From positions 159,303-223,302 of the IMG/VR virus record IMGVR_UViG_3300032294_002797: 64,000 nucleotides of DNA; one strand, 5' to 3'. Under the pieces are notes generated by a model. That model searched no databases. It was not told the DNA's origin and saw only the letters and a program-made list of their open reading frames with translations. Below, piece after piece: positions 22,470 through 46,335 of the stretch. The position numbers and the translations under genes were made by a program. Numbering within the stretch: position 1 is the stretch's first letter; every line of letters starts with the position of its first letter.

Positions 22470-23594
22470 TTATATTCCTAATAATGGATTTTTATTATTG
22501 TGTATTGTATTCGCTTTACAAAATTGGCTGCACTTTGACATGTATTTAATCTGAGAAGCCCCTATGTAACAACAGCAGGAGCGTATGCCTCCTAACAGTT
22601 CTTGTATTACTTTGTCTAAAGAACCTTTATATTTAACTATTATTTTTGTGCCTTCACTTGCTCTATACTCTTTCACTGTATCTTCGTATAGTTGTTGAGA
22701 GTGGTGTGTGCTCATACCATAATAAGAAAATTTAACTTTACGTTTTTCTGTTGGGTATCCAGGATCATTTGGTTGATAAAAATTGCCATGACGAACTAGA
22801 TATTCATATTCCCATTCTCCGTCGCACGGATCACTTCCAGCAAAATAACCACCCAACATAACAAAATCTGCCCCAGCACATAGAGCCTTAGAAACATCTC
22901 CAGAAGTCTTATGTCCTCCATCAGAAACGATTAAGCCGAGTTTCTTGGGTCCATTTTGAAGACCATGAGCGACATAAGCATTTTCTAAACAGGCGGATAA
23001 CTGAGGCATTCCGCAGCCGGTTAGGAATCTTGTGGTACAGGCCGATCCCCCGCCTATTCCGACTTTTACTATGTCTACGCCGCCATAAATCAAAAGTTCT
23101 TGAGTAGATGATGTATTAGTGACATTTCCTGCAATAATAATTGATTCTGGAAAATGCTCTCTAACCTTATGACAATACTTAACAAAAACATCCATATGAC
23201 CATTGGGAACATCAATGCAGATATTTGGTTGTTTGCCTAGTTTTTGTTTAAGTTCTAGCAAATGAGCTAGGTCACTCTTTTTATATCCTATAGATACGAA
23301 AGTATAGTCAATATTGTTCGGATGTTTTATAAAATAATTTACTAATTCATCTACACTATGGTATTTATGTAAACATGCTATTATCTTATGATTAGCTAAG
23401 TCTTTAGCCATATCAAAACTACAAAAACTCATATTAGCACACATGATAGGTATACCAGTCCAAGTTCTTGGACTATGGTAAAAACTAAATGTTCTTTCTA
23501 AATGAATTTCTGATCGACTAGTTAGAGTGGATCGTTGAGGTACTATAAGAATATCATCAAAATCCAATTTGGTTTCATCAATAATTTTTTGCAT
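22470..23594 (-). CDS. guaC: GMP reductase
   Basis: LDFDDILIVP.RS, CIDVPNGH, KVGIGGGSACTTR, SDGG, YRASEG; no CBS domains. Confidence 0.9.
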   Translation of the reverse strand: MQKIIDETKLDFDDILIVPQRSTLTSRSEIHLERTFSFYHSPRTWTGIPIMCANMSFCSFDMAKDLANHKIIACLHKYHSVDELVNYFIKHPNNIDYTFVSIGYKKSDLAHLLELKQKLGKQPNICIDVPNGHMDVFVKYCHKVREHFPESIIIAGNVTNTSSTQELLIYGGVDIVKVGIGGGSACTTRFLTGCGMPQLSACLENAYVAHGLQNGPKKLGLIVSDGGHKTSGDVSKALCAGADFVMLGGYFAGSDPCDGEWEYEYLVRHGNFYQPNDPGYPTEKRKVKFSYYGMSTHHSQQLYEDTVKEYRASEGTKIIVKYKGSLDKVIQELLGGIRSCCCYIGASQIKYMSKCSQFCKANTIHNNKNPLLGI

Positions 23595-26009: not shown

Positions 26010-26930
26010 TTACATAGTTGGTCTAATAATACCATTACCTTCGTATCTCCTTAATCCTCTATATTTAGCATTATTTAATGGCATAGTATTTTTTTTAAAA
26101 TGATCTATGTATTCTTTTTGTTGAGGTTTTGCTAAGGGATCTTTTTTTCTCAATAAGGAAAGCCATAAAGCTGCACACCCCACAGCAAAAGGAGTAGACA
26201 TACTAGTACCAGACATTACGGCATAACTATTGCCTGGTGCTGCGCTAATAATATCTGCTCCTGGGGCTAGGAAATCCAAAGAATCACCAGTACAACTAAA
26301 TTGACAAATATCTAGACTCCGATCAATTGCTCCTATACTTATAGTCTCATCATATTTAGCAGGAAAATTTATTTCATGTTTTAATCCACTATTACCGGCG
26401 GCACAAAAAATAATCACTCCCTTACCTGTAGCATATAGCAATGCTCTTTCAATGGCTAAAGAAGGATAAGTTGATCCAAGTGACATTGTTATTATATCTG
26501 CCCCATGATCTGTCGCCCATACTATAGCAGAACCGACGTTGTTATTGGAACCCATACCACTATCATCAAGTGCTTTTATAGGCATAATTTTAACTGATGG
26601 AGCCACCCCTACTATTCCTCTATTATTATTGATAGCGGCGATAGTTCCTGCAACATGAGTTCCGTGTCCATTAACATCTATGGGATCTGTATTCGGTTGA
26701 ATAATATTGTACCCGTCAACTAGATTATCTTTAATATCATCATGATTGATATCACAACCGGTATCTATTACAGCAACAGTAACTCCTACCCCATTTGTTT
26801 TAGACCAACATGTTGGAACATCGAATAATGATATAGACCAAGGGAATATTTGTCCTGCAGAAGCTGATAATCCGTATATAGGCTCTTTAATATGCGGTAA
26901 CAGTCTACATTCTTTACGATTTCTATTCAT
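26010..26930 (-). CDS. subtilisin-like serine protease (S8)
   Basis: VAVIDTG, HGTHVAG, AAGN, GTSMSTP. Confidence 0.95.
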   Translation of the reverse strand: MNRNRKECRLLPHIKEPIYGLSASAGQIFPWSISLFDVPTCWSKTNGVGVTVAVIDTGCDINHDDIKDNLVDGYNIIQPNTDPIDVNGHGTHVAGTIAAINNNRGIVGVAPSVKIMPIKALDDSGMGSNNNVGSAIVWATDHGADIITMSLGSTYPSLAIERALLYATGKGVIIFCAAGNSGLKHEINFPAKYDETISIGAIDRSLDICQFSCTGDSLDFLAPGADIISAAPGNSYAVMSGTSMSTPFAVGCAALWLSLLRKKDPLAKPQQKEYIDHFKKNTMPLNNAKYRGLRRYEGNGIIRPTM

Positions 26931-27708
26931 GGGGAGACACTTTCTCTAATAGTTGTTTATTTGTATCAATCCAATCTATATAATAGCTGATTCTTGTGTG
27001 TCCACTCTCATCTCCATAATTAGAGTCTGTTAATCTATCTGAGGCAAATACGCACGAGTGAATACCAGCTAATTTTTTATCTATAAATAATCCACCTCCA
27101 CTATCACCAGGAGTGATTAAACACTCTAATGAGGTTTTTGGTTTGTCATCATTAGTACAAATAAGTAAATGATTTTCTATCCTATTGATTATATTGGAGC
27201 CTGCTCTTTTTTTATTTGCTGGTATATTTTTATCAAACCCTGTAATAAAATTGCCGGGGGATCCGAAACCGGCCTGACTACTAACTTTTCCTACCTCGTT
27301 AGTCTCATTATAAAGATTAGGATAAAAATTAAGCTTAATAGGGATTTCTAATTTGCCGATTGCTATGTCATAAAAACCTATCTTTCCACGCAAAAATTTG
27401 TCATGTATTATAAAAGAAGAGCAGGGATAAATATTTTTATCAAATAAAACCATAGGCTTATCTGAACCATCCAAGATGTGTGCGGCGGTTAAAAAATAAT
27501 AATCTCCAATTAACACACAAGATCCACGATAAGGAGTATGTAATTCATCTTTATAATTACCGATTATAGATAATACGCATTCATGTTGCGCCCCATAATT
27601 AAGATATTCATCGTCTGATCGCACAGGATCCATAGTAATACTATAACTAGTAGTACTATATAATAAAATAGAAATACAAATAATAATTTTTAAAATATAT
27701 GTAAACAT
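26923..27708 (-). CDS. trypsin-like serine protease (S1) with signal peptide
   Basis: LTAAH, DIAI, GDSGG; hydrophobic N-terminus. Confidence 0.9.
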   Translation of the reverse strand: MFTYILKIIICISILLYSTTSYSITMDPVRSDDEYLNYGAQHECVLSIIGNYKDELHTPYRGSCVLIGDYYFLTAAHILDGSDKPMVLFDKNIYPCSSFIIHDKFLRGKIGFYDIAIGKLEIPIKLNFYPNLYNETNEVGKVSSQAGFGSPGNFITGFDKNIPANKKRAGSNIINRIENHLLICTNDDKPKTSLECLITPGDSGGGLFIDKKLAGIHSCVFASDRLTDSNYGDESGHTRISYYIDWIDTNKQLLEKVSPHE

Positions 27709-28023: not shown

Positions 28024-29022
28024 TTATAATGATGCGGCTATTAGGCATCCTTTAGCTACAGCGTGTAACGGATTAGTAGACATACTGATTTCGGATATTG
28101 CTAGTGGAAAATTACATTCTGTTAATTTTTGAGATAAACTTTCTATATAACCATCGGCTTGGGAAGTGCCTCCAGCAACTATAATTTTAATTGGTTTTTT
28201 AAACTTAGGCAAAGATTTATGATTACTTAATGCATAAGATAACTGTTTTGCTGTATATTCAACCAATCTTTCATAGTATGATGACACCGCGTTTAAAACC
28301 GGATTGTCATTGGGGTGTCCGACTTTAAATCCGCCCGCCTCCTTCTCGATCTGAACTACGCTATCGGGTTCCCCTGTGGCAACAGAACTCATTCTATCAA
28401 TCCAATCGCCGGATTTTGTTGTGGAGAATACAACGGTGGGCTCGCCGTTTAACATAACACATACATTAGTCATCCCGGCACCACAACTTATACCAATACC
28501 AGTATAATCATCTCTTTCTAATTCTGCATAACATAAAGCTTCGGCTTCGTTGATAGATTTAGCATCATATCCCACCTCTGATAGTATAGTTTTAACGACA
28601 TCTTCATGATATCCTACATCAAAATCATCATCTTCTTGATCTATCGGCTGTGCAGGAACGCAGAATACTAATTTTTCATTTGCTTCTGTGGCTTTTCCTA
28701 CTACTTCTTTTAAAATAAAGGCGAGTATTCGTTTAGCATCTTTTTCTTTTACTGACACCACTCCTCTATACATTGGTCTTCTTGCAGTTTCATTTCTTTC
28801 TACGGCTTTTTCTATAGCATCTTTACCCAATAAGATAAATGATCCATCCGTATCTCTGATAAAAATTTTGCCTTTTAATCCTTTTTCTATCATTTTATTA
28901 GCAACGGGGGTTGAAGGCTTAATAACATAAAAAGCATCTCTGAATTCTTTGAAAATTAAACCCTTAGAACCTTGTTCAGACATGACTATAAAAGATGTTC
29001 CTACGTCTAAACCTTTACTCAT
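28024..29022 (-). CDS. actin-fold ATPase (MreB/MamK/FtsA superfamily)
   Basis: Phosphate-1 GLDVGT, connect-1 INEAEA, phosphate-2 SCGAGMT, adenosine VAGGTS, connect-2 PLHAVAKG. Confidence 0.85.
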   Translation of the reverse strand: MSKGLDVGTSFIVMSEQGSKGLIFKEFRDAFYVIKPSTPVANKMIEKGLKGKIFIRDTDGSFILLGKDAIEKAVERNETARRPMYRGVVSVKEKDAKRILAFILKEVVGKATEANEKLVFCVPAQPIDQEDDDFDVGYHEDVVKTILSEVGYDAKSINEAEALCYAELERDDYTGIGISCGAGMTNVCVMLNGEPTVVFSTTKSGDWIDRMSSVATGEPDSVVQIEKEAGGFKVGHPNDNPVLNAVSSYYERLVEYTAKQLSYALSNHKSLPKFKKPIKIIVAGGTSQADGYIESLSQKLTECNFPLAISEISMSTNPLHAVAKGCLIAASL

Positions 29023-29728: not shown

Positions 29729-30359
29729 GAATCATTCACTCGATGTGAGTCATTTTTTTCTATTTGCTAATACAGAATATAGTAAAAATACAGAAAAACA
29801 ATTGTGGGAATCGTCTGCGTTTTTAAGCAAGAAATCTATTTGTATATTATTTAATTTAGCAAAGCCCTTGGACTACTATAGTATAGTTCAAAAACATGCA
29901 AATAAATGGATTTTTTTTCGGCTATTAGCAGACAATACAAATAATACTTATTATAGAAATTTGGATTTACTAAATTTGTATGATTTTCAAAAATTTTTTT
30001 TAATACCAGATATGTATGACGCTATCTATTTTGGCCCTAAAAAACAAGCGATATTAGAAACAATATCATATATTAAACAAAAGAATATAGACATAACAAA
30101 AATGAATCATATGGATATAAATAATAAAGTGCTGGAATCTGTCAAATCTTTATATCCAATCCAAGAAAATAAAGGAACTATGAGTAGTGGATTATGGACT
30201 TATCTATATCTGAAAACAAAATATCCCTTATCAAAATTTACTTTAATAGACTATGCTTTAAATATGAAATCTGCTTATCATAATTCGTTATTTGAACAGG
30301 GATTTATATTATCAGAAATATTGAGCAACCAATGTGAATACATTGGCGATCATTTATGA
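29700..30359 (+). CDS. hypothetical protein, possibly glycan-related
   Basis: Overlaps the cupin; MSSGL..Y..L and H...FE motifs. Confidence 0.5.
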   Translation: MKILSDLFFRNHSLDVSHFFLFANTEYSKNTEKQLWESSAFLSKKSICILFNLAKPLDYYSIVQKHANKWIFFRLLADNTNNTYYRNLDLLNLYDFQKFFLIPDMYDAIYFGPKKQAILETISYIKQKNIDITKMNHMDINNKVLESVKSLYPIQENKGTMSSGLWTYLYLKTKYPLSKFTLIDYALNMKSAYHNSLFEQGFILSEILSNQCEYIGDHL

Positions 30360-31259
30360 TGATAAAATTCTACCTTTAGACGTTCTAACAATATATCCCA
30401 TTCGTACTAAGAATGGTTCCACGGTATTTTCTATGGTCTCTACTGCTATGCCAGTCATTGCAGAAATACTTTTAACTCCTAGAGGAGAACCCTTCATCTT
30501 TTTCAGAGCATCTAGATATAATCTATCATGCATATCTAAACCATTTTGATCTATACCCTGATCTTTAAAGATTTTGTCTATATCTACAGTTTGATCTTTA
30601 TAATAAGATACATAATTTTTATACCAACTCAATCTAGCATTAAGAATACGAGGAGTACCCTTGCTTCTTTTAGCAATTTCAATCAGATGACTATCATCAA
30701 TCATTAGTCCAAGTTTATTTGCGTTCAACCTTGCAAGTTTAGCTAATTCATCGCTGTTATAATAAGATAGGTGTTCTTTAATTGTAAATCTATCATAAAA
30801 AGGCTGACTTAAGCTGCCTCCACTTGTGGTTGCTCCAGCGATAGTAAATTGTGGAAGATCGATGGTTTCTGGACGGTCTTTATCATCCTCTCCCTTTACT
30901 GTGATATTAATAGCAAAATCTTCCATTACAGGATAAAGAAATTCTTCTACAATTTTTGGTAGTCTATGAATTTCGTCAATAAACAAAAGAGATCTTGGAG
31001 CAATACCCATGAGATAAGGCAGAAGATTTTTTACGCTACGGATATTAGCTGCGTTGACTGTATAGAGATTAACACCTAGTTCATTAGATATTGCTTGTGC
31101 TATAGTGGTTTTACCAAGACCAGGAGGCCCATCAATTAGAACATGAGGTAAAACTCCGTCCGATTCCTTGCATCCGTGAATAATAATTTTTAGTCTGTCG
31201 ATAACAGATGATTGTCCAATAATTCCATCAAAACTAGACGGTCTTAGATTGTTAGCCAT
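30354..31259 (-). CDS. ruvB: Holliday junction branch-migration ATPase RuvB
   Basis: LRP..F..IIGQ, GPPGLGKTT, FIDEIHRL, GATT, DRF, GTPRI, EPFL. Confidence 0.95.
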   Translation of the reverse strand: MANNLRPSSFDGIIGQSSVIDRLKIIIHGCKESDGVLPHVLIDGPPGLGKTTIAQAISNELGVNLYTVNAANIRSVKNLLPYLMGIAPRSLLFIDEIHRLPKIVEEFLYPVMEDFAINITVKGEDDKDRPETIDLPQFTIAGATTSGGSLSQPFYDRFTIKEHLSYYNSDELAKLARLNANKLGLMIDDSHLIEIAKRSKGTPRILNARLSWYKNYVSYYKDQTVDIDKIFKDQGIDQNGLDMHDRLYLDALKKMKGSPLGVKSISAMTGIAVETIENTVEPFLVRMGYIVRTSKGRILSS

Positions 31260-31689
31260 TATTTCTTATCTCCAATAGGGTGTTTTTAATCCAAATAGAT
31301 ATATCTTCAGTAGGTTGTTTAATGTAAGCAGAAGTTAATGCATCGATAGCCTCTTGTTTTGTAAAACCAAGATCAACTAAACAAGGTATTGCTTTATTTA
31401 GTAAACTTTCATTTGGCTTTGGCTGATTAGGGTTTTTAATCTCTGGCTTTTCCGGCGTTTTGCTTGAATCATCTGGTTTCAGTAACTTGTCATCATATAT
31501 AATTTTAAGAGTTTTTATTTTTTTGGGCTTAAAAACCGTACCGCAATCACAAACAATTTTAAAATTTTTGGTTTGAGTTTCTAATAAAGACAACCAATGT
31601 TCGTATCCGCAGTTGTTGTTTGGACATCTATATTTTAGATGAACATCTAAACTAATTGGTTTTTGGTTTTTTATTGATTTTGTTATCAT
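31252..31689 (-). CDS. zinc ribbon fused to RuvA C-terminal (domain III)-like region
   Basis: CP...C and CDCG; AIPCLVDLGFTKQEA..IKNTL; overlaps the ruvB start. Confidence 0.7.
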   Translation of the reverse strand: MITKSIKNQKPISLDVHLKYRCPNNNCGYEHWLSLLETQTKNFKIVCDCGTVFKPKKIKTLKIIYDDKLLKPDDSSKTPEKPEIKNPNQPKPNESLLNKAIPCLVDLGFTKQEAIDALTSAYIKQPTEDISIWIKNTLLEIRNNG

Positions 31690-32496: not shown

Positions 32497-33546
32497 TTAA
32501 CCTATGCAAAATTTATCACTAAGTTGAGATGCGAGGTCTTTGGCAGCACTGGACAGAAACCGATTGTTGCTAAAGTACAGTGCTGTAGACGCTTGGTTTA
32601 GGTACTCGACCACCGTTTTTAAAAGTTTGGTCTGTGACCCATCAAGGTTTATATCCTCGTCTGGGAGCGACTCTAGCATATCATTCTGGTCAACAGGAAC
32701 GACAGGCATAGGATCACCATAAGAACGGGACTGTAATTCATTAAGAATTTTAGTAGCAACATCTGCTGATACTGGAACACCAGTTTCATCGGCTTGCTTA
32801 TAAGCCTTAGCATACCCCTTATACCATTCGTCACTACATTTATCGGGAATAATCTGTAGAGTTGCTGGCTGACCAGTAAGAGCACTCTTAAGATCGGCCA
32901 CATTAACTACTTGACCAGTGCTACCGGGAAGCAGACTTGTAAAGTACGGAGCCTTCTTTTCCCAGCCTTTACGCCACCAAGTATAAGGAACACGATAAAT
33001 CTGGTTAGGCTTAATTGCTCGTGGATCACCACCAAAATAGTTAACCAGTTTCTTTTGCAAGCCATTCCAGAAAGTTTTATTTGAACCAATCATTTGGCGA
33101 CTAGCATCATCAAAAATCCAGTAGCACTGATACCCATTACGAGTATCAACAACCCAACTTGGCTTGACCGGAAACTCATTAATCTTTTTGAGGAACTGCT
33201 TCTTCTTTGTCATCACAACACTAGGTTTGAAATAGTTACCTTCGTTATCTCGACCAGCATCCATATCACAAAAACAACAAGTAAACTCTTTAATAGCATA
33301 TAGTTTACGTCCGCCATTTACATAAAAATAAACATCAGAACTATTATTGATATTAGCATTAATAGCCTCGTCAAGAGTATTAGTATGATACATATTACTA
33401 ATCTTTTTACGAGGATTACCATTATGGCAAAAAATATTATTTTGCTTGAAAGAATTCAAGAAACGATTTCTCTCAATAACATTGCCATTAGCAAAAACAT
33501 TGTTATCGTTTGAAAAAGGGTTAAATCCAAGATTATCATTAAACAT
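32497..33546 (-). CDS. RepB-type DNA primase (AEP superfamily)-like protein
   Basis: YFYVN, FCDMD, PSWVVDTRNGYQCYW, GGDP....QIYRVP. Confidence 0.75.
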   Translation of the reverse strand: MFNDNLGFNPFSNDNNVFANGNVIERNRFLNSFKQNNIFCHNGNPRKKISNMYHTNTLDEAINANINNSSDVYFYVNGGRKLYAIKEFTCCFCDMDAGRDNEGNYFKPSVVMTKKKQFLKKINEFPVKPSWVVDTRNGYQCYWIFDDASRQMIGSNKTFWNGLQKKLVNYFGGDPRAIKPNQIYRVPYTWWRKGWEKKAPYFTSLLPGSTGQVVNVADLKSALTGQPATLQIIPDKCSDEWYKGYAKAYKQADETGVPVSADVATKILNELQSRSYGDPMPVVPVDQNDMLESLPDEDINLDGSQTKLLKTVVEYLNQASTALYFSNNRFLSSAAKDLASQLSDKFCIG

Positions 33547-33580
33547 ATTATTTCCAACTTTCCTGTGTACTATCTATCCA

Positions 33581-33619
33581 GATATTGGGACAGCAACCTT
33601 TACTATCATTAGCAATATC
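33581..33619 (-). other. stem-loop between the tRNA-like element and the primase gene
   Basis: GATATTG/CAATATC stem, internal loop, GATAGTAA/TTGCTGTC stem with G.U pairs. Confidence 0.55.
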
Positions 33620-33623
33620 AAAA

Positions 33624-33703
33624 AGATGGTAGAGGAATCGAACCTCTATTGTAGGATAGTAAAAACTATATAGGTACTATCTTACAAGTTCCAAACACCA
33701 CCT
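33624..33703 (-). ncRNA. unclassified tRNA-like RNA
   Basis: Acceptor AGGTGGT/ACCATCT, T-arm AGAGG-TTCGATT-CCTCT, 13-bp helix in place of the anticodon arm. Confidence 0.65.
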
Positions 33704-33716
33704 TAACTATTTAATT

Positions 33717-34583
33717 TTAGTAGTTTCCGTAGAGCCCATTGTCCAAATCTGACTCGTCTTCATCTTCTTCATCGTCAAAACTGTTCCAATAAGCATCATC
33801 ATATTCATCATACAGAGCCTCTTCTTCGTCATCATAATCGTCTTCACTAAACTCACTCTTATAGAGAGGCTTGAGAAGTTCGCCTTGATACTCGCCAACT
33901 ACTTCATAGCGACAAGTACGAAGTTTTTCACAATTACAATCATTAGGAACACTAACAACGTCCTTGGGATTAATCTTGACAATTACGATCTTGTCACCAG
34001 AATCTACGCTACCATAACTAGCAACATAGTTCAAAGCACCAGCATGAAGTCCCTGAGAGCATCCAACTCCACGATTATCATCAACCTTTGCTCGTCTCAT
34101 TTCGCAAATGCTACCAACACGGTTGTCAAATGTACCGGCATACTTATCCTTATAATCATTTCGCACAGCCTTATAAGCCAAGAAATGACCATCCTCAGTA
34201 ATAGGAAGATACTGATGCTCCAAGAAATCATACAGTTCAGTCTGACTCTGCATACTTGGATTTTCCATCAGATTATCAAGAAAATTAACAAGAGGCTGAA
34301 AAGGCAAACCCTTACTCATAAACTCCAGAATACGCTTGCTGATCGCCCCATGAACTTCTTCGCCATCATAAAGCACCTGACCATTCTTGACCTCAACCCT
34401 GCCCTGACTAAATGTAGCCACAGCAGTTTGAATATCTACAAGTTCCAGCAACTCATCTTCGCTGGCAGATTGCAGACTATCCATAATCAACCTATAGTTA
34501 ATATGATCCGGCAATACCTGATGAGCCTTATTCTTAAGGATCAGTGTAAGATTGCCATCAACCCACATAAAAGGAACGCTCAT
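33717..34583 (-). CDS. rIIB: rIIB-like protein
   Basis: ENPS...ELYDFL, ITEDGHFLAYKAV, CSQGLH, NPKDVVSVP.D...KLRTCRYEV. Confidence 0.9.
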   Translation of the reverse strand: MSVPFMWVDGNLTLILKNKAHQVLPDHINYRLIMDSLQSASEDELLELVDIQTAVATFSQGRVEVKNGQVLYDGEEVHGAISKRILEFMSKGLPFQPLVNFLDNLMENPSMQSQTELYDFLEHQYLPITEDGHFLAYKAVRNDYKDKYAGTFDNRVGSICEMRRAKVDDNRGVGCSQGLHAGALNYVASYGSVDSGDKIVIVKINPKDVVSVPNDCNCEKLRTCRYEVVGEYQGELLKPLYKSEFSEDDYDDEEEALYDEYDDAYWNSFDDEEDEDESDLDNGLYGNY

Positions 34584-34608: not shown

Positions 34609-37272
34609 TTAAATTATCGAATTACCAATCAACTCTTTAAACTTATCAACATTATCAAACTTTGTTGACCAAGAACTTTTCTTGCTATAGTAACTATTAC
34701 TAGAACCAAAACTGAGAGGATTAGTTGAACGAAGTTCACGCAAATCGCCTCGACACTCTTGGCTACACACAATATACTTCAACATCGGCTGTTTGTCAAG
34801 AGCCTCTTTAATACTATTACGCAACTCATCGACTTTCGGCAGTTTATCTTTGAGCGAATAATCTGGCTTGATAAGTTTGGTCATAGATTCTTGCTCATTA
34901 GAACTACCATACAATGTAGCAACCCATCGAATGAGACTATTATAGAGAATATTATTCTGACGAATATCTTTACTATTGATTCCATTCAGCCCAATATTGT
35001 GCAACAGTTTCGTGATATGGGTAAAATAATCAACAGCCTTAAACTTTTGAATATCAAATGATGGTCTATAAATAGTGTCAGCAAAGAATTCAAGAGTCAT
35101 ACACTGATCCATTAGAGATACAAGTTGCTGATCTTTAATGTATTGACCATATTCCAGTCCAAGTAGGTTTAGAACATGAAACATAAACTGCTTATCAATA
35201 CTACCATAGTTATAGTAATTGTAATCACTACCTTTCTGGACTTTATTGTATTCAGACCTAGCGTGTTCTGTAAGACCATTATATTCGGCTAAATCCTTAA
35301 ACTTATTCTCATACAGTTTCTCTAGTCTTTCCTTAAAGAACTTATTGAAACTAATAAGGTTATAGCCCTTCTTGATTAGATCATTAGCATAACTGCTCTT
35401 TATCGCAAAGATTTTAGTATCTCCGAAAAGTTCAGTAGCAAGTGTGCTGTCCTGCTCTTTAATAAAGAGATTCAGATCATGAATACCAGGAAATCCTTCA
35501 ACAGAAGCATATCGCAAGATAGGAATGTATACGATCTCATCCTGTTCAAGAACATCGTCTCTTTCTTCCTGATCCTTAATTTCAAGAAGATACTGAGCAT
35601 CGTTCATAAGATTATCGCTTACGATAGCCCCAGCACTCTTAATCTTACCATGAATCAAGAATAGACTATCCTTACTGACAGAACCAAGAGGATCAACAGT
35701 GCGACCCTTCTTTGAAGGACTACTCAAAAGACTCTTAAAATCCGAGACCTTAAGGAGTTTATCTTCTCCCCCAATATCAGAAATAATCTTTTCAAAACCC
35801 TCAGACGAATCTTCTGGATGGTCGCTGTCGATAAAAAGATAGGCATAGCAATCGTTCTGATTACAATACTTTGTAACAATCTTCTTGGCAGACTCTTCTC
35901 CCTTAACGTCACAAACAAAGAACGCCATAGGATTACTTTTACGATTATTCTGCCAGTAATACTGACCCTTGCCATTCAATGTTTCGGAGTGAATCTTATC
36001 TGTAAGATAAACCATCCTACGAGAACGGTATCCAGAGGTTCTAAAGTTAAAGACGTACAGATTCTTACTCTTTTTAAGAGTGTACTCTAGGTCTTTTCCA
36101 GACTGCAATTCATGAACCTTATTATTAGTATCCGTCCATGATGCTCCCGCAGTCCAGCCACCAGCAAGATCACTAAGATTATAGTATGTTTGATAAGCCT
36201 CAACCAAACTCTTGGCGGTTGACAACTTATTGCTCATATCCTGCTTAAGTTCAAGATAGATTTCTTGAGTACGATCACGCAGAGTCTTGATAACATTTTT
36301 AGTATACTGCAAACCCTCGCGGCTTACATCCATCTCAAGTTCACCAATACCAAATTGGATCTCAAGATATAATCCGGCATTAAGAATCTCTCTGACTAGA
36401 CTCTTCCAATTATCAACGTCGGCTTTACCAAAAGCCCTATTCCACTTTTGAATATGGTCTGGTTGATCGGGCCTATCTTCGCCCACAATTTTACTAGAGT
36501 CTACTGGATACGCAATATTACCCATGATAGCAACAACACCACTACCGGGACTATTATGACCACTAGGATATTTGGTGTGTTCATTACTAACTCGTCCAAT
36601 CTTCCAACCCTTACCTTCGATCACAACATTGTGATGAGAATACGAGCCATCATTAATCGATGAACAAACACCACCATTGATAATAGGCTTAAGTTTGAAA
36701 TAATGGAAAATTCTCTTTGCCTTAGCAGTAAACTCATGAAAGTCATACTGCTTAACAGCAAAACTAATTTCTAGTCCATTCGGTTCCTTGGTATCTGTGA
36801 CACTAACCAAATTCAAACTAGGAACACCGCTTTCATCCATAGCCGCGATATAAGATAGTTTCTTACCATCATAATAAGAAATAGTGCTAAAACTCTTGGT
36901 ATAAGCAAAAGGACTCTTACTACCAAGACCAAGACAACCAACAAAATCATTGCTATCATTCTTGTTAGATGCCCCGTATGTTGTATACAATTCCTCCATA
37001 TCGGTCTGACTAAGACCAGTACCAAAATCTCTAACAGTAAAAGAGGGATTGGTTTGTGTGGGGAGAGTTACCCTAAAAGGGTTTTGATTTTTTGCAGCAA
37101 TATGGGCGTCATAAGCATTTGTGCTAAGTTCACGAATAACCGCCATAACCTTATCGGAATAAAGAGAATCCGAAAGGATCTTAAACATTTTGCTGGTTTG
37201 TGCGATACTAAACTGATTAGCCGACTGAATACCAACCGAATGAATCTCAACCGTCCTGTCTGCCAACTTCAT
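34609..37272 (-). CDS. rIIA: rIIA-like protein (GHKL ATPase N-terminus)
   Basis: LYSDK..RELSTNAYDAH, DFGTGL, GCLGLGSKSPFAY, SREGLQY; directly upstream of rIIB. Confidence 0.9.
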   Translation of the reverse strand: MKLADRTVEIHSVGIQSANQFSIAQTSKMFKILSDSLYSDKVMAVIRELSTNAYDAHIAAKNQNPFRVTLPTQTNPSFTVRDFGTGLSQTDMEELYTTYGASNKNDSNDFVGCLGLGSKSPFAYTKSFSTISYYDGKKLSYIAAMDESGVPSLNLVSVTDTKEPNGLEISFAVKQYDFHEFTAKAKRIFHYFKLKPIINGGVCSSINDGSYSHHNVVIEGKGWKIGRVSNEHTKYPSGHNSPGSGVVAIMGNIAYPVDSSKIVGEDRPDQPDHIQKWNRAFGKADVDNWKSLVREILNAGLYLEIQFGIGELEMDVSREGLQYTKNVIKTLRDRTQEIYLELKQDMSNKLSTAKSLVEAYQTYYNLSDLAGGWTAGASWTDTNNKVHELQSGKDLEYTLKKSKNLYVFNFRTSGYRSRRMVYLTDKIHSETLNGKGQYYWQNNRKSNPMAFFVCDVKGEESAKKIVTKYCNQNDCYAYLFIDSDHPEDSSEGFEKIISDIGGEDKLLKVSDFKSLLSSPSKKGRTVDPLGSVSKDSLFLIHGKIKSAGAIVSDNLMNDAQYLLEIKDQEERDDVLEQDEIVYIPILRYASVEGFPGIHDLNLFIKEQDSTLATELFGDTKIFAIKSSYANDLIKKGYNLISFNKFFKERLEKLYENKFKDLAEYNGLTEHARSEYNKVQKGSDYNYYNYGSIDKQFMFHVLNLLGLEYGQYIKDQQLVSLMDQCMTLEFFADTIYRPSFDIQKFKAVDYFTHITKLLHNIGLNGINSKDIRQNNILYNSLIRWVATLYGSSNEQESMTKLIKPDYSLKDKLPKVDELRNSIKEALDKQPMLKYIVCSQECRGDLRELRSTNPLSFGSSNSYYSKKSSWSTKFDNVDKFKELIGNSII

Positions 37273-37314: not shown

Positions 37315-37343
37315 AGTATACTATCGGTTGTCACGCTTGTCAA
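37315..37343 (-). promoter_or_regulatory. sigma70-like promoter (rIIA operon)
   Basis: TTGACA-AGCGTGACAACCGATAG-TATACT. Confidence 0.8.
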
Positions 37344-39668: not shown

Positions 39669-39715
39669 TATTTATTCCTTATTATAATACTACTTATTAT
39701 CTAATTACAAATTAA

Positions 39716-39989
39716 TAGGGGCTATCGGATTCGAACCGATACTGTACGGATTTTCTTACTACTATAACTTTCGTTACCATTTCTGTTTGTAGTCTGGACT
39801 TTACCTTAACCATAGTTTTCACTTTAGGTTCCTGCCGTCAAGTCTCTACACCTTCATATTTCTATGCTTGGCTCGGTATTGCCATTTTACAGGTTTCACC
39901 GAATTTGACAAGTTCTACTTTAAAGATTTCTCTCTAAGCACTCCAATTTAACTAAAAGTCCGATGACTCTGCCGTTGGTCTAAGCCCCC
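39716..39989 (-). tRNA. tRNA-Leu(UAA), short variable loop, intron-split (exons 39989-39956 and 39754-39716)
   Basis: Spliced 73-mer folds: GGGGGCT/AGCCCCT acceptor, anticodon loop CT-TAA-AA, ATCGG-TTCGAAT-CCGAT T-arm; no encoded CCA. Confidence 0.9.
39755..39955 (-). mobile_element. group I intron (IC3-like), 201 nt, no ORF
   Basis: P AAATTCGGTGAAA, Q AATACCGAGC, R GTAGAGACTTGACGG, S AAGGTAAAGTCC, terminal G; P1 ACTT/GAGT with U.G at the splice site. Confidence 0.9.
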
Positions 39990-40074
39990 ATAATAACCCT
40001 GACTACACAAACCACTGATTTGAGGTTGACTAATGTTGTGCCTCTATCATATCTGTGTAGCCAGAGTTTATTAT
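39990..40074 (-). ncRNA. long rod-like hairpin, candidate ncRNA
   Basis: ATAATAA/TTATTAT plus CTCTGGCTACACAGAT/GTTTGTGTAGTCAGGG with several G.U pairs; inner GAGG/CCTC. Confidence 0.5.
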
Positions 40075-43403: not shown

Positions 43404-44042
43404 ATGAAAAAACAATGTGCTAAATGTCTAAAAAAATTTCCCGCTACAAATGAATACTTTTATAAAGATAAAAGAGCATCGTCTGGCTGTTGTTCTAGAT
43501 GTAAAAGATGTCATAATAAACAAAGAAAAGAATATTTAATGAATCAAGATAACTCTAATAAGCATAAAGAAAGATGCAAAAAATATTATCGCGCACATAA
43601 AAATAAAATAGCAGAATATTATAAAGATAATAGAGATCAAATACTAAAAAGAAAAAAAGAATACAGACATAAAAATAAAAAGAAAATTGCTGAATATAAA
43701 TATTGGTATCATAAAAATAGGTATAAAAATGATTTACAGTATAGGCTATTGCATAACTGTGGAAATCATATAAGAAAATATCTAAAACAAAATAAAAACG
43801 ATAAACGGTCAACAGAATTGTTGGGATGTTCTACACTAGAATTGAAGGCATATCTAGAAAAACAATTTGATAATAAAATGTCATGGAAAAATTATGGTAC
43901 TTATTGGCATATCGACCATATCATTCCATGTTCTAGTTTTGACTTTACCGATCCCATACAACAACAACAGTGTTTTCATTATACAAATTTACAGCCATTA
44001 GAGGCAAAAGCAAATATTAAAAAAGGAAATAAAATACTTTAG
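43404..44042 (+). CDS. free-standing HNH homing endonuclease-like protein
   Basis: CxxC/CxxC N-terminus, WHIDHIIP..HYTNLQPL...N. Confidence 0.85.
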   Translation: MKKQCAKCLKKFPATNEYFYKDKRASSGCCSRCKRCHNKQRKEYLMNQDNSNKHKERCKKYYRAHKNKIAEYYKDNRDQILKRKKEYRHKNKKKIAEYKYWYHKNRYKNDLQYRLLHNCGNHIRKYLKQNKNDKRSTELLGCSTLELKAYLEKQFDNKMSWKNYGTYWHIDHIIPCSSFDFTDPIQQQQCFHYTNLQPLEAKANIKKGNKIL

Positions 44043-45352
44043 ATATCTCTGTTATCTCCATATATGTATGCCAGTGTGGGAAATCTTAGGGATGTTGTTC
44101 CGTCTTGGTTCTTCGTTTCTTCAAAATAGTTAACTCGAATAATTTTACCCAAAATATCTTGTGGATTTTCATAAAAGTACTGTCTTTGTTCAATATTAAA
44201 TCCGCTTCCTACCCTCACCTTATATCCTTTATGTTCGATAGTTACACATGACAGCATCTCTTCCTCACACTCTGCACCATCTTTAACATATCGAAATGGC
44301 CCCATCTCAACTTCAAGTACAGAATATTCTGCGTCTTGAAATTCCTTAAACTTTAGCAAATCTTTGCTTCTTTTTCCCTTATAAGGCTCATCTGCTCGTA
44401 GCATAAGTCCTTCATACCCATAGTCTTTGCTCTTTTTAATCCACTCTTGAAAATGATCGTCATCTTTAATCAATTCTTGACCAAGAACACTAAGACAAAC
44501 ACAAGAATTATTCTTCATAACTTCTCGTAGATTATTATAGCGATGGGTATAAGTTTTATTTTTATCACCCTTCTTGCTATAAAATTCGTCATGAGAGATC
44601 ATATCAAAAATTTTGTAAGAAGGATTAGGAATGGTATGATCCTTCTTTTTAAGTTGCTTCATGATTCCTTGGAAATCTTCATTACCATCATCATCAACCA
44701 AACAAAGTTCGCCATCAAATACTACATTAGATACGCCAAGAGCCTTAATACCACCGCGAACAATATCCAAAGTATCAAATTCTTTTCCCGTGCGGGAATA
44801 AAAAGTAGCGTACCCATTACTATCAACAATAGCGATACATCTAGCACCGTCAATTTTACGGCTAACATACCATTCATCCTTCCAGTCTACAAGTTTAGGC
44901 TCGTATTTATCTGCCAAGGCAACGCTAAACTCTGGAATATGGTCAGGAATAGCCTTGTTGATAATCTTATCACCAGCACGGGTTTTCAAATCCTTGTCAA
45001 TAATACAATGGATAAGTTCCTCGTATTCAGAATAGTGTTCAATAAAACTATTAACAGCAGATATAGCATCATGCCCGGTAATCTGTCTGCTTTTAAGAGC
45101 ATCAAGAAGATCAAAGAAGTTTTTATATTCATTCTTTCTGGCTACAAGATGATTCTTCTTCTTGAGATTGTCGCTAGTGACATTGTATTGCCACAACGGA
45201 TGATAGGTATACAACAGAATATTCTTCGTAAAACTAGCAGCGGCACTACTATGATTACAATAGTCCTCAATAATGCCCTGCTTATCAATAGTGCTGCTGG
45301 TGGCTCTAAGATCACGAACCATTCCCCAAACATAATCAAAATCGTGAATCAT
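44039..45352 (-). CDS. lig: ATP-dependent DNA ligase
   Basis: KIDGAR, SRTG, FDGE, FD, EGLMLR, LLKFK, VGSGF, SLRFP. Confidence 0.95.
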   Translation of the reverse strand: MIHDFDYVWGMVRDLRATSSTIDKQGIIEDYCNHSSAAASFTKNILLYTYHPLWQYNVTSDNLKKKNHLVARKNEYKNFFDLLDALKSRQITGHDAISAVNSFIEHYSEYEELIHCIIDKDLKTRAGDKIINKAIPDHIPEFSVALADKYEPKLVDWKDEWYVSRKIDGARCIAIVDSNGYATFYSRTGKEFDTLDIVRGGIKALGVSNVVFDGELCLVDDDGNEDFQGIMKQLKKKDHTIPNPSYKIFDMISHDEFYSKKGDKNKTYTHRYNNLREVMKNNSCVCLSVLGQELIKDDDHFQEWIKKSKDYGYEGLMLRADEPYKGKRSKDLLKFKEFQDAEYSVLEVEMGPFRYVKDGAECEEEMLSCVTIEHKGYKVRVGSGFNIEQRQYFYENPQDILGKIIRVNYFEETKNQDGTTSLRFPTLAYIYGDNRDI

Positions 45353-45972: not shown

Positions 45973-45979
45973 AATATAA

Positions 45980-46335
45980 TGGAGGCGGCGGGGTACTGCC
46001 CCCCGCGTCTTGTTATATTGTCCACAATATTTTCTACAAGTTTATTTTGTTCATAAATTTTAAACAAGATTAAAGAGCAAACAACATTCATCTTGTCGTA
46101 CCAACTAGTCTCAGGCTAGAACCCGTTGGCTATTCTAGCAGCCGAAGGATTTTACGACAATCTTTTGAACGCTACCTTCATCGCTTTCTAAGATTGTTAC
46201 TGCTTTTTATTAAGCAGCAAGGGCTAACTGAGTATTGCCAGTTAAAGCACTTGATATGATGATTAAAGAGGCCAACATATCATCCTCTACTTGCTTATAT
46301 GGTTTCTAATATTCAATCGATTCTAATTCGCCCCC
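45980..46335 (-). ncRNA. ssrA: tmRNA; tag (A)GNTQLALAA at 46239-46210
   Basis: GGGGGCG/CGCCTCC-A acceptor with G3.U70; TTAACT upstream of the resume codon; tag ends LAA-stop; 356 nt. Confidence 0.92.

What the first reader, a model, noticed from the sequence alone, without database searches (positions are those of the whole stretch)
33560..33703. Unclassified tRNA-mimic RNA plus a second hairpin directly upstream of a RepB-type primase: candidate ncRNA-primase module
Seen: the rIIB-primase intergenic region (minus strand) folds as an 80-nt tRNA-like unit. It has a 7-bp acceptor AGGTGGT/ACCATCT with G3.U70, a canonical T-arm AGAGG-TTCGATT-CCTCT, a 9-nt D-region GTTTGGAAC, and a 13-bp helix (one mismatch) with a 13-nt loop instead of an anticodon arm. 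A bulged hairpin follows (33581-33619), then the primase ATG at 33546. Known: G3.U70 is the AlaRS identity element; this architecture resembles the tmRNA tRNA-like domain and tRNA-mimicking bacterial Y RNAs; RepB'-type primases recognise hairpin ssi sites. Inference, with alternatives: an RNase P/Z mRNA-processing signal, a decoy for host tRNA nucleases or SmpB, or an RNA/ssDNA cofactor or primer site for the adjacent primase. The discriminator would be U rather than A, so alanylation is uncertain.
Basis: partly seen in the sequence, partly recalled or inferred. Interest (0 to 1): 0.85.

Follow-up and report, generated by a model that had tools for sequence, protein, structure and literature searches.

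The report
Phage tRNA-like punctuation element after rIIB
A conserved, non-decoding tRNA look-alike lies between the rIIB gene and the next gene in a large family of uncultured freshwater jumbo phages; it most likely serves as a cutting signal for the host's tRNA-processing enzymes, and it stays in place even in relatives that have lost the neighbouring primase gene.

Summary
An equivalent element is present downstream of rIIB in all 93 related loci with enough flank. The acceptor, T and mini-D stems show many compensatory changes (90% of cells paired, 15 of 18 pairs covary). The "anticodon" arm varies from a 13-bp helix to nothing, or to a second tandem unit. G3.U70 is not conserved (11 of 50 sequences). 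ARAGORN calls none of the elements I submitted, and no Rfam family reaches its gathering score. The second hairpin (33581-33619) is also real (98.6% paired, 11 of 14 pairs covary). Gene X (32497-33546) is an AEP primase of the RepB'/PrimPol fold.

The "ncRNA-primase module" idea fails for the tRNA-like element. Three relatives lack the AEP domain, two by losing the whole primase gene and one by keeping only its C-terminal domain. All three keep the element directly after rIIB and lack the hairpin. Primase homologues that are not preceded by rIIB have no such element.

Best reading (about 0.5): a t-element-like RNase P/RNase Z processing signal that separates rII mRNA from the downstream replication-gene mRNA, with hairpin 2 as the primase mRNA leader. 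No transcript ends could be mapped, so the mechanism is inferred. I rate it a new variant of a known kind, of moderate interest.

The parts
33624..33703 (-). tRNA-like element (TLS), 80 nt. Acceptor 33697-33703 / 33624-33630; mini D arm 33688-33696; long arm 33675-33687 / 33649-33661 with 13-nt loop 33662-33674; T stem 33643-33647 / 33631-33635; T loop 33636-33642.
   Evidence: Sequence; MFE and centroid fold; recovered by a model built from other types; covariation.
33620..33623 (-). U-run directly after the 3' acceptor strand. The would-be discriminator is U and no CCA is encoded.
   Evidence: A T-run or pyrimidine follows the acceptor in nearly all relatives.
33581..33619 (-). Hairpin 2. 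Outer stem 33613-33619 / 33581-33587; 5-nt internal loop; inner stem 33601-33607 / 33589-33595; loop 33596-33600; bulged C at 33588. It is the conserved leader of the primase mRNA.
   Evidence: Alignment A2 and pair counts; model R2 hits once per genome segment, always right after the TLS; absent where the primase AEP part is absent.
32497..33546 (-). Gene X: AEP-fold primase (RepB'/PrimPol-like N domain of about 230 residues plus a helical C domain). D94 and D96 (DxD motif) are invariant.
33717..34583 (-). rIIB gene. Its stop codon lies 13 nt upstream of the TLS.
   Evidence: PHROG 609, E 1.4e-71; tblastn.
34609..37272 (-). rIIA gene, first gene of the presumed transcription unit.
   Evidence: PHROG 612, E 1.9e-109.
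37315..37343 (-). Sigma-70-like promoter (TTGACA-17-TATACT) upstream of rIIA. No comparable site lies between rIIB and gene X.
   Evidence: consensus scan only.

Best explanation
The element is a non-decoding tRNA-like structure embedded in the rIIA-rIIB-replication-gene transcript.

What selection keeps is the part of a tRNA that processing enzymes read. This is the 7-bp acceptor stem stacked on a 5-bp T stem, a canonical T loop, and a small D arm whose GG can form the elbow with the T loop. The anticodon-arm equivalent is free to change or disappear.

The most likely mechanism (inferred) has three steps. RNase P cuts at the 5' side, creating the 3' end of the rII mRNA. RNase Z cuts after the unpaired U that follows the acceptor, because no CCA is encoded. 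This releases an ~80-nt tRNA-like RNA and creates the 5' end of the downstream mRNA. The early rII message and the downstream replication and recombination genes are then uncoupled in stability and dosage.

Hairpin 2 lies 2-4 nt downstream in most lineages. It would then be the 5'-terminal structure of the primase mRNA. It could act as a stabiliser, or, given its invariant internal-loop nucleotides, as a protein-binding translational operator.

Shown: the structures, their conservation and covariation, the synteny, the independence from the primase, and the lack of a recognisable promoter between rIIB and the next gene. Inferred: the cleavages, the enzymes and the consequences.
For: (1) An equivalent element was found in all 93 related loci that have rIIB and at least 250 nt downstream.

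(2) Covariation: 90.1% of cells are paired and 15 of 18 pairs show compensatory changes, including all 7 acceptor pairs. No shuffle in 500 reached the observed values, and the slid controls pair at 37-57%.

(3) The conserved parts are those that, to my knowledge, RNase P, RNase Z and the CCA-adding enzyme read. The T loop TTCGAnn and the D-loop GG are invariant. The lower arm ranges from a 13-bp helix to a 13-nt linker, to nothing, or to a second unit.

(4) Frequent G.U pairs make the fold specific to the sense (mRNA) strand.

(5) The element stays directly after rIIB when the primase gene is deleted (L085, L097) or truncated to its C domain (L098). The next start codon is then only about 20 nt away, which leaves no room for a promoter. 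Downstream genes must therefore be read through the element, so it cannot be a full terminator.

(6) In the window there are good sigma-70-type sites before rIIA and inside its 3' end, but none between rIIB and gene X. A distant X homologue that does not follow rIIB has a perfect TTGACA-17-TACAAT promoter and no such element.

(7) The phage's own tRNA-Leu and tmRNA also lack an encoded CCA. To my knowledge such genes are matured by RNase Z and a CCA-adding enzyme.

(8) Many lineages carry an extra hairpin between the rIIB stop codon and the element. That is where a 3' protective hairpin would sit after an RNase P cut.

(9) Precedent: plant mitochondrial t-elements are non-canonical cloverleaves found by the same GGTTCRANYCC motif. 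Their ends coincide with mRNA 5' and 3' termini (PMC1920247).
Against: No transcript ends could be mapped. The only RNA-library data are sparse assembled contigs of relatives. One contig joins the rIIB 3' end to the 5' three-quarters of the element, which is either an unprocessed precursor or DNA carry-over.

There is only one such element in the 64-kb window, so it is not a genome-wide punctuation system.

Within type A the 13-nt loop and the long arm are almost invariant: the element is 88-99% identical where the primase gene is 72-75% identical. A simple cleavage signal does not need that, which hints at an extra, lineage-specific role.

The host, and therefore its RNases, is unknown.
Confidence: 0.5

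Rival explanations
1. 3'-end module of the rII mRNA. The element stays attached to the rIIB message, either because only the 3' side is cut or because the acceptor stem plus U-run causes partial intrinsic termination. It then protects the message from 3' exonucleases, in the way I recall that tRNA-like 3' ends protect plant-virus RNAs. Alternatively it attenuates read-through into the replication genes.
For: The element travels with rIIB, not with the primase. A U-run follows the acceptor in most lineages. Other jumbo phages have a classic terminator hairpin plus T-run at this position after rIIB (L108, L109). The scan flags the T arm plus trailing Ts as weakly terminator-like. The Y-RNA paper argues that tRNA-like ends resist bacterial exonucleases (PMC4201824).
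Against: The stem next to the U-run closes a multi-branch loop, not a simple GC-rich hairpin. In type B the Ts are paired inside the acceptor stem, and L053 has no U-run. Downstream genes have no promoter of their own, so termination cannot be efficient. An intact 7-bp acceptor plus T arm should itself be an RNase P substrate.
Confidence: 0.2
2. The released ~80-nt RNA is itself the product. It would be a stable, possibly CCA-tailed tRNA mimic that acts in trans through its lineage-specific lower arm. Possible roles are a decoy for host tRNA-targeting defences or acceptor-end toxins, or a cofactor or guide.
For: Within type A the whole element, loop included, is 88-99% identical where flanking genes are about 72% identical. 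A TAGTT-like motif recurs in the distal loop or linker of types A, A', C, L064 and L102. Tandem duplication occurs in type E. To my recollection, T4 encodes small stable tRNA-like RNAs of unknown function.
Against: The lower arm is absent in types C and D and in minimal forms such as L076, so no common effector part exists. No complementary target is enriched in the window. The discriminator is U or C and G3.U70 is not conserved, so there is no obvious aminoacylation identity.
Confidence: 0.13
3. The reader's module: the tRNA-like RNA and/or hairpin 2 is a cofactor, primer or ssi-like recognition site (RNA or ssDNA) for the adjacent RepB'-type primase.
For: Gene X is structurally a RepB'/PrimPol AEP. 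Hairpin 2 is present only where the full-length primase gene is present, and it has invariant unpaired nucleotides suited to protein recognition.
Against: The tRNA-like element is retained without the primase and is absent from AEP homologues in other contexts. Loss of hairpin 2 together with the gene is also what simple physical adjacency in one deletion predicts. L076 has a full primase gene but no hairpin 2. The cumulative GC skew is monotonic, so no origin signal lies near here. As I recall the RSF1010 ssiA sequence, there is no resemblance to it.
Confidence: 0.1
4. Decaying tRNA pseudogene, or an attP-type tRNA fragment, without function.
For: It has tRNA-like T and acceptor arms but no anticodon arm. 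ARAGORN and Rfam do not call it.
Against: Compensatory changes maintain all helices across lineages whose primase proteins are only 43-70% identical. The element is more conserved than the flanking coding DNA. An attP fragment would not need a covarying 5' acceptor strand.
Confidence: 0.02

Closest known systems
Plant mitochondrial t-elements (tRNA-like mRNA processing signals; Forner et al. 2007, PMC1920247)
   Same: Both are non-canonical cloverleaves with a conserved GGTTCRANYCC T arm and an acceptor stem. Both lie between or next to protein-coding genes, do not decode, and are proposed RNase P and RNase Z cut sites that define mRNA 3' and 5' ends.
   Different: This one is in a bacteriophage, with one element per genome region at a fixed rIIB junction. 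Its lower arm is extremely plastic, and a second conserved hairpin follows it. Cleavage is shown for t-elements but not here.
mascRNA / MALAT1 tRNA-like 3'-end processing, and the mitochondrial tRNA punctuation model (from my own knowledge)
   Same: A tRNA-like fold inside a longer transcript is used by RNase P and RNase Z to make transcript ends and to release a small tRNA-like RNA.
   Different: Those are eukaryotic nuclear or organellar systems. There is no sequence relationship.
tmRNA tRNA-like domain, including the mRNA-less jakobid mitochondrial form
   Same: Both have an acceptor plus T arm with a long helix in place of the anticodon arm. The window copy has G3.U70. There is a weak sub-threshold Rfam tmRNA match for one relative (17.2 bits).
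   Different: G3.U70 is not conserved. A covarying D stem is present. There is no tag reading frame and there are no pseudoknots. The discriminator is U or C. The phage has a separate bona fide tmRNA at 45977-46335 with a different T loop.
Bacterial and phage YrlA Y RNAs (tRNA-mimicking; Chen et al. 2014, PMC4201824)
   Same: Both have a tRNA-like module with T and D arms. M. smegmatis YrlA can be cut by RNase P and CCA-tailed.
   Different: This element has no Ro-binding stem and no GNCGAA motif. No Ro60/TROVE gene was found among the larger ORFs within about 12 kb. There is no Rfam match.
RSF1010 RepB' primase with its ssiA/ssiB hairpins
   Same: The downstream protein shares the RepB' catalytic fold (3h20, 3h25), and a conserved hairpin lies beside the gene.
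   Different: As I recall, ssi sites are ssDNA hairpins in oriV rather than in the primase leader. Hairpin 2 uses many G.U pairs on the mRNA strand and has a different architecture (two stems, a 5/1 internal loop). The tRNA-like element is independent of the primase.

Membership tests
Canonical tRNA | Cloverleaf with a 5-bp anticodon stem and a 7-nt anticodon loop, detectable by tRNA finders | tested here: not met
   The element has a 13-bp helix with a 13-nt loop. ARAGORN finds nothing in the window or in 20 relatives. The best Rfam hit is tRNA-Sec at 19.4 bits against 47.
Canonical tRNA | 7-bp acceptor stem, 5-bp T stem with a TTCRAnn loop, and GG in the D loop | tested here: met
tmRNA / tmRNA tRNA-like domain | Conserved G3.U70 (alanine identity) | tested here: not met
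   At pair 3:70 the counts are A-U 21, G-U 11, G-C 5, U-A 2 and other 11, out of 50 distinct sequences.
tmRNA / tmRNA tRNA-like domain | Tag reading frame and pseudoknots; a score above the Rfam tmRNA threshold | tested here: not met
   The element is 80 nt with no room for either. tmRNA-type hits score 9.3-17.2 bits against 47. The real tmRNA is elsewhere in the window.
YrlA-type Y RNA | Ro-binding stem with a GNCGAA motif; encoded next to a Ro60 (TROVE) gene | tested here: not met
   The element has no such motif or stem. The neighbouring ORFs scanned have no TROVE domain (small ORFs were not all scanned).
t-element-like processing signal | Non-canonical cloverleaf with a GGTTCRANYCC T arm and an acceptor stem, located between coding regions | tested here: met
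t-element-like processing signal | The element's ends coincide with mRNA 3' and 5' termini; cleavage by RNase P and RNase Z | not testable with these tools
   Only sparse assembled metatranscriptome contigs were available, and they give no end pile-ups.
Intrinsic terminator | GC-rich simple hairpin immediately followed by a U-run, ending the transcription unit | tested here: inconclusive
   A U-run is present in most lineages, but the adjacent stem closes a multiloop. Downstream genes lack their own promoter.
RepB'/PrimPol AEP primase (gene X) | AEP catalytic fold with a conserved DxD motif | tested here: met
   Foldseek finds 6zp9 (E 5.5e-8, TM by target 0.72) and 3h25 (TM by target 0.66). 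D94 and D96 are invariant in 93 homologues. Distant homologues are fused to a DnaG zinc ribbon.
RepB'/PrimPol AEP primase (gene X) | Match to the Pfam RepB_primase or other AEP HMMs | tested here: not met
   There is no Pfam or NCBIfam hit. The only sequence-level PDB hit is with the profile, at E 0.016, to 6zp9. The relationship is visible by structure only.
   The element is present without the primase in L085 and L097, and with only its C domain in L098. It is absent from AEP homologues in other contexts.

The most novel reading that the evidence does not exclude
The excised ~80-nt tRNA-like RNA is a stable, CCA-tailed phage small RNA whose fast-evolving lower arm is a lineage-specific effector, for example a decoy for host tRNA-directed defences. 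Hairpin 2 is an RNA operator through which the AEP primase controls its own translation. Together they would form a two-part regulatory unit with no described counterpart in phages.
Probability: 0.12. Interest if true: 0.8.

Novelty: new variant of a known kind. Interest (0 to 1): 0.55.

Why it matters
The use of tRNA look-alikes as cutting signals for mRNA is well documented in organelles and in the eukaryotic nucleus. I found no report of a conserved family of this kind in bacteriophages.

This family is large, with more than 90 loci from many freshwater metagenomes. It is absent from Rfam and invisible to tRNA finders. It offers a natural series, from full cloverleaf to 46-nt minimal form to tandem units, that shows which parts of a tRNA shape are needed.

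If the cleavage is confirmed, it would show how a jumbo phage separates the fate of its rII message from that of its replication genes without a terminator-promoter pair. It would also give annotators a new feature to look for after rIIB. The second hairpin is an independent, well-supported structured leader of an AEP primase gene.

Tried and rejected
- **GenBank phage searches.** Megablast of the region and tblastn of gene X found nothing. Only rIIB has distant hits, at about 40% identity.
- **Sequence-only identification of gene X.** Pfam, NCBIfam, PHROGs and phmmer against PDB all failed.
- **First AlphaFold run.** With a shallow alignment it gave pLDDT 55. It needed the deep alignment from the 1.8-billion-protein search.
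- **Read mapping.** The RNA libraries hold only a few low-depth contigs of relatives and give no end information.
- **Promoter reading of hairpin 2** (a TTGnnn -35-like box). Rejected because no -10 element is conserved, whereas both stems covary.
- **Promoter inside the type A element** (TTGGAA-18-TATAGT). Rejected because it is not conserved in the other types.
- **A uORF starting at the ATG in hairpin 2.** Rejected because that ATG is TTG or CTG in many relatives.
- **Derivation from the phage's own tmRNA.** Rejected because the T loop and acceptor differ.
- **A pairing target for the 13-nt loop in the window.** Matches are at chance level.
- **Origin of replication.** The cumulative GC skew is monotonic across the window.
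- **Literature searches.** Searches for a phage rIIB or primase tRNA-like element found nothing specific.

Full report
**What is there.** On the minus strand the order is rIIA (34609-37272), rIIB (33717-34583), an intergenic region of 170 nt, and then a 349-codon gene X (32497-33546). The intergenic region holds the 80-nt element at 33624-33703, a short U-run, a two-stem hairpin at 33581-33619, a purine-rich ribosome-binding stretch and the ATG at 33546. ARAGORN finds no tRNA. At gathering thresholds Rfam finds only a tmRNA (45977-46335) and a group I intron (39774-39965) elsewhere in the window. With permissive settings the best match to the element is tRNA-Sec at 19.4 bits against a threshold of 47.

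**Source genome.** The window is part of a 223-kb uncultured viral contig from freshwater. It has no close relative among GenBank phages. Its rIIB is about 40% identical to those of jumbo phages.

**Gene X is a primase.** Sequence libraries gave nothing. A profile search of 1.8 billion proteins found 439 relatives. The distant ones fuse the N-terminal 200 residues to a DnaG-type CHC2 zinc ribbon. With a 93-sequence alignment AlphaFold gave pLDDT 89.7. Foldseek then matched the cyanophage S-2L PrimPol AEP domain (6zp9, E 5.5e-8) and RSF1010 RepB' (3h20 and 3h25, E 1e-6 and 1e-5). D94 and D96 of the DxD motif are invariant.

**The tRNA-like element is conserved and structured.** Searching viral contigs with gene X returned 80 loci, and an exact 24-mer of the element returned 18 more. 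All 93 loci with rIIB and at least 250 nt downstream carry a T-arm-bearing element at this position. The elements fall into several types:
- Type A is the window form.
- Type A' (L007) has a different long arm.
- Type B has a 4-bp D stem and a two-part long arm.
- Type C has a D arm plus a 13-nt single-stranded linker and no anticodon arm.
- Type D is 46-52 nt, with only acceptor, D arm and T arm.
- Minimal forms exist, such as L076.
- Type E has two units in tandem.

A covariance model built only from types B, C and a few odd forms recovered the window element at exactly 33624-33703 (26.5 bits). It recovered all other types too. It gave no second hit in the 64 kb and nothing in unrelated phages apart from a genuine tRNA. 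On the resulting alignment 90.1% of cells pair and 15 of 18 pairs have double changes, including all seven acceptor pairs. No shuffle in 500 and no slid control comes close. That alignment was fitted to the model, which favours pairing. However, the T-stem pairs are anchored by the invariant loop and show the same pattern in raw sequence.

G3.U70 is present in only 11 of 50 sequences. Frequent G.U pairs make the fold strand-specific. Within type A the element is 88-99% identical in phages whose primase genes are 72-75% identical. This is not a decaying pseudogene.

**Hairpin 2 is a separate conserved structure.** In 20 diverse relatives 98.6% of cells pair and 11 of 14 pairs covary. A G-C pair closes each stem, and the sequence TGAT and a CCC are invariant around a 5/1 internal loop. 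Its model hits once per genome segment, always just after the tRNA-like element. It does not cover the ribosome-binding site.

**Which gene does the element belong to?** Three relatives answer this.
- In L085 and L097, from different samples, the order is rIIB, element, then the homologue of the window's gene after X. The primase gene and hairpin 2 are both gone.
- In L098 only the C-terminal domain of X (residues 240-349) remains. It starts 22 nt after the element, again without hairpin 2.

Conversely, X homologues that do not follow rIIB have no such element. L099 has a perfect sigma-70 promoter instead, and L105 overlaps its upstream gene. More distant phages that keep the rIIA-rIIB-X order do have the element (L102, X 43% identical, T loop TTCAACT). 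P0006 shows the same gene order, with a gap of the right size. So the element marks the rIIB junction and is independent of the primase. Hairpin 2 goes with the primase gene, although simple adjacency within one deletion could also explain its loss, and L076 has the gene without the hairpin.

**Mechanism.** Several observations bear on it.
- The parts kept by selection are the acceptor-T stack, the T loop and the D-loop GG. To my knowledge these are the determinants read by RNase P, RNase Z and the CCA-adding enzyme.
- No CCA is encoded here, in the phage's tRNA-Leu or in its tmRNA. To my knowledge that points to RNase Z-type 3' maturation.
- No promoter-like site lies between rIIB and the next gene, and in L085 there is no room for one, so transcription must pass through the element.
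- Other jumbo phages have an ordinary terminator at this spot.
- Many lineages add a hairpin just upstream of the element, and hairpin 2 lies just downstream. These are the positions where protective end structures would sit after excision.

The closest precedent is the plant mitochondrial t-element (PMC1920247). I therefore favour a processing, or "punctuation", signal at about 0.5.

The rivals are as follows:
- a retained 3' stabiliser or attenuator of the rII message (0.2);
- a trans-acting tRNA-mimic small RNA (0.13), which the strong sequence conservation of the type A loop keeps alive;
- the primase-linked reading, now mainly for hairpin 2 (0.1);
- a pseudogene (0.02).

No transcript ends could be obtained, so the mechanism remains an inference.

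**Novelty.** No Rfam family reaches its gathering score, and ARAGORN calls none of the elements I submitted to it. The literature searches found no description. It works like a known kind of signal but in a new setting and with unusual plasticity, so I rate it a new variant of a known kind.

Noticed in passing
window 39715-39990 (-): A tRNA-Leu(UAA) gene is split by a 201-nt group I intron in the anticodon loop. As I recall, this is the classic cyanobacterial and plastid arrangement. Default ARAGORN missed it, and intron mode finds it. No CCA is encoded. It may hint at a cyanobacterial host.
   Followed up: partly
window 45977-46335 (-): A phage-encoded tmRNA (Rfam, 100 bits) that ARAGORN did not report. 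It has G3.U70, discriminator A, no encoded CCA and an unusual T loop (GGCAGUA).
   Followed up: partly
L085 1755-1860; L097; L098 3588-3700: Natural variants of the phage family lack the AEP primase gene entirely (L085, L097) or keep only its C-terminal domain as a 127-aa ORF (L098). These phages must prime replication in another way.
   Followed up: partly
L016 3826-3929; L033 3015-3119; L035 3796-3909; L036; L039: Some lineages carry two tRNA-like units. They can be read as a tandem pair or as one nested inside the other, closed by a single outer acceptor stem. Alternative pairing of one 5' strand with two 3' strands looks possible in L016.
   Followed up: partly
window 33662-33674 (-) and the equivalent loops in L007, L037, L064, L102: A TAGTT-like motif recurs in the distal loop or linker of several otherwise different lower arms. 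Within type A the 13-nt loop is almost invariant. No complementary partner was found in the window.
   Followed up: partly
L017, L037, L062, L066, L036, L043, L073, L076 (the 60 nt upstream of the element): Additional stable hairpins lie between, or overlap, the rIIB stop codon and the element. They have different sequences in different lineages and no U-run.
   Followed up: partly
window 28024-29022 (-): A 332-aa protein matches the Pfam Volactin family (an actin-like family) full length at E 2e-63. An actin-like protein is worth a look in a jumbo phage.
   Followed up: no
window 30354-31689 (-): A RuvB homologue (E 4.5e-47) is preceded by a small protein with a weak RuvA C-terminal domain match. 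This is a phage-encoded branch-migration pair in the same gene string as the primase.
   Followed up: no
window 22470-23594, 26010-27708, 44039-45352 (-): An IMP dehydrogenase/GMP reductase-like gene, adjacent subtilase and trypsin-like protease genes, and an ATP-dependent DNA ligase gene.
   Followed up: no
L059 5151-5220: A genuine tRNA (probably Gly, anticodon UCC) lies just downstream of the primase gene in one relative. This shows that real tRNA genes also insert in this region.
   Followed up: no
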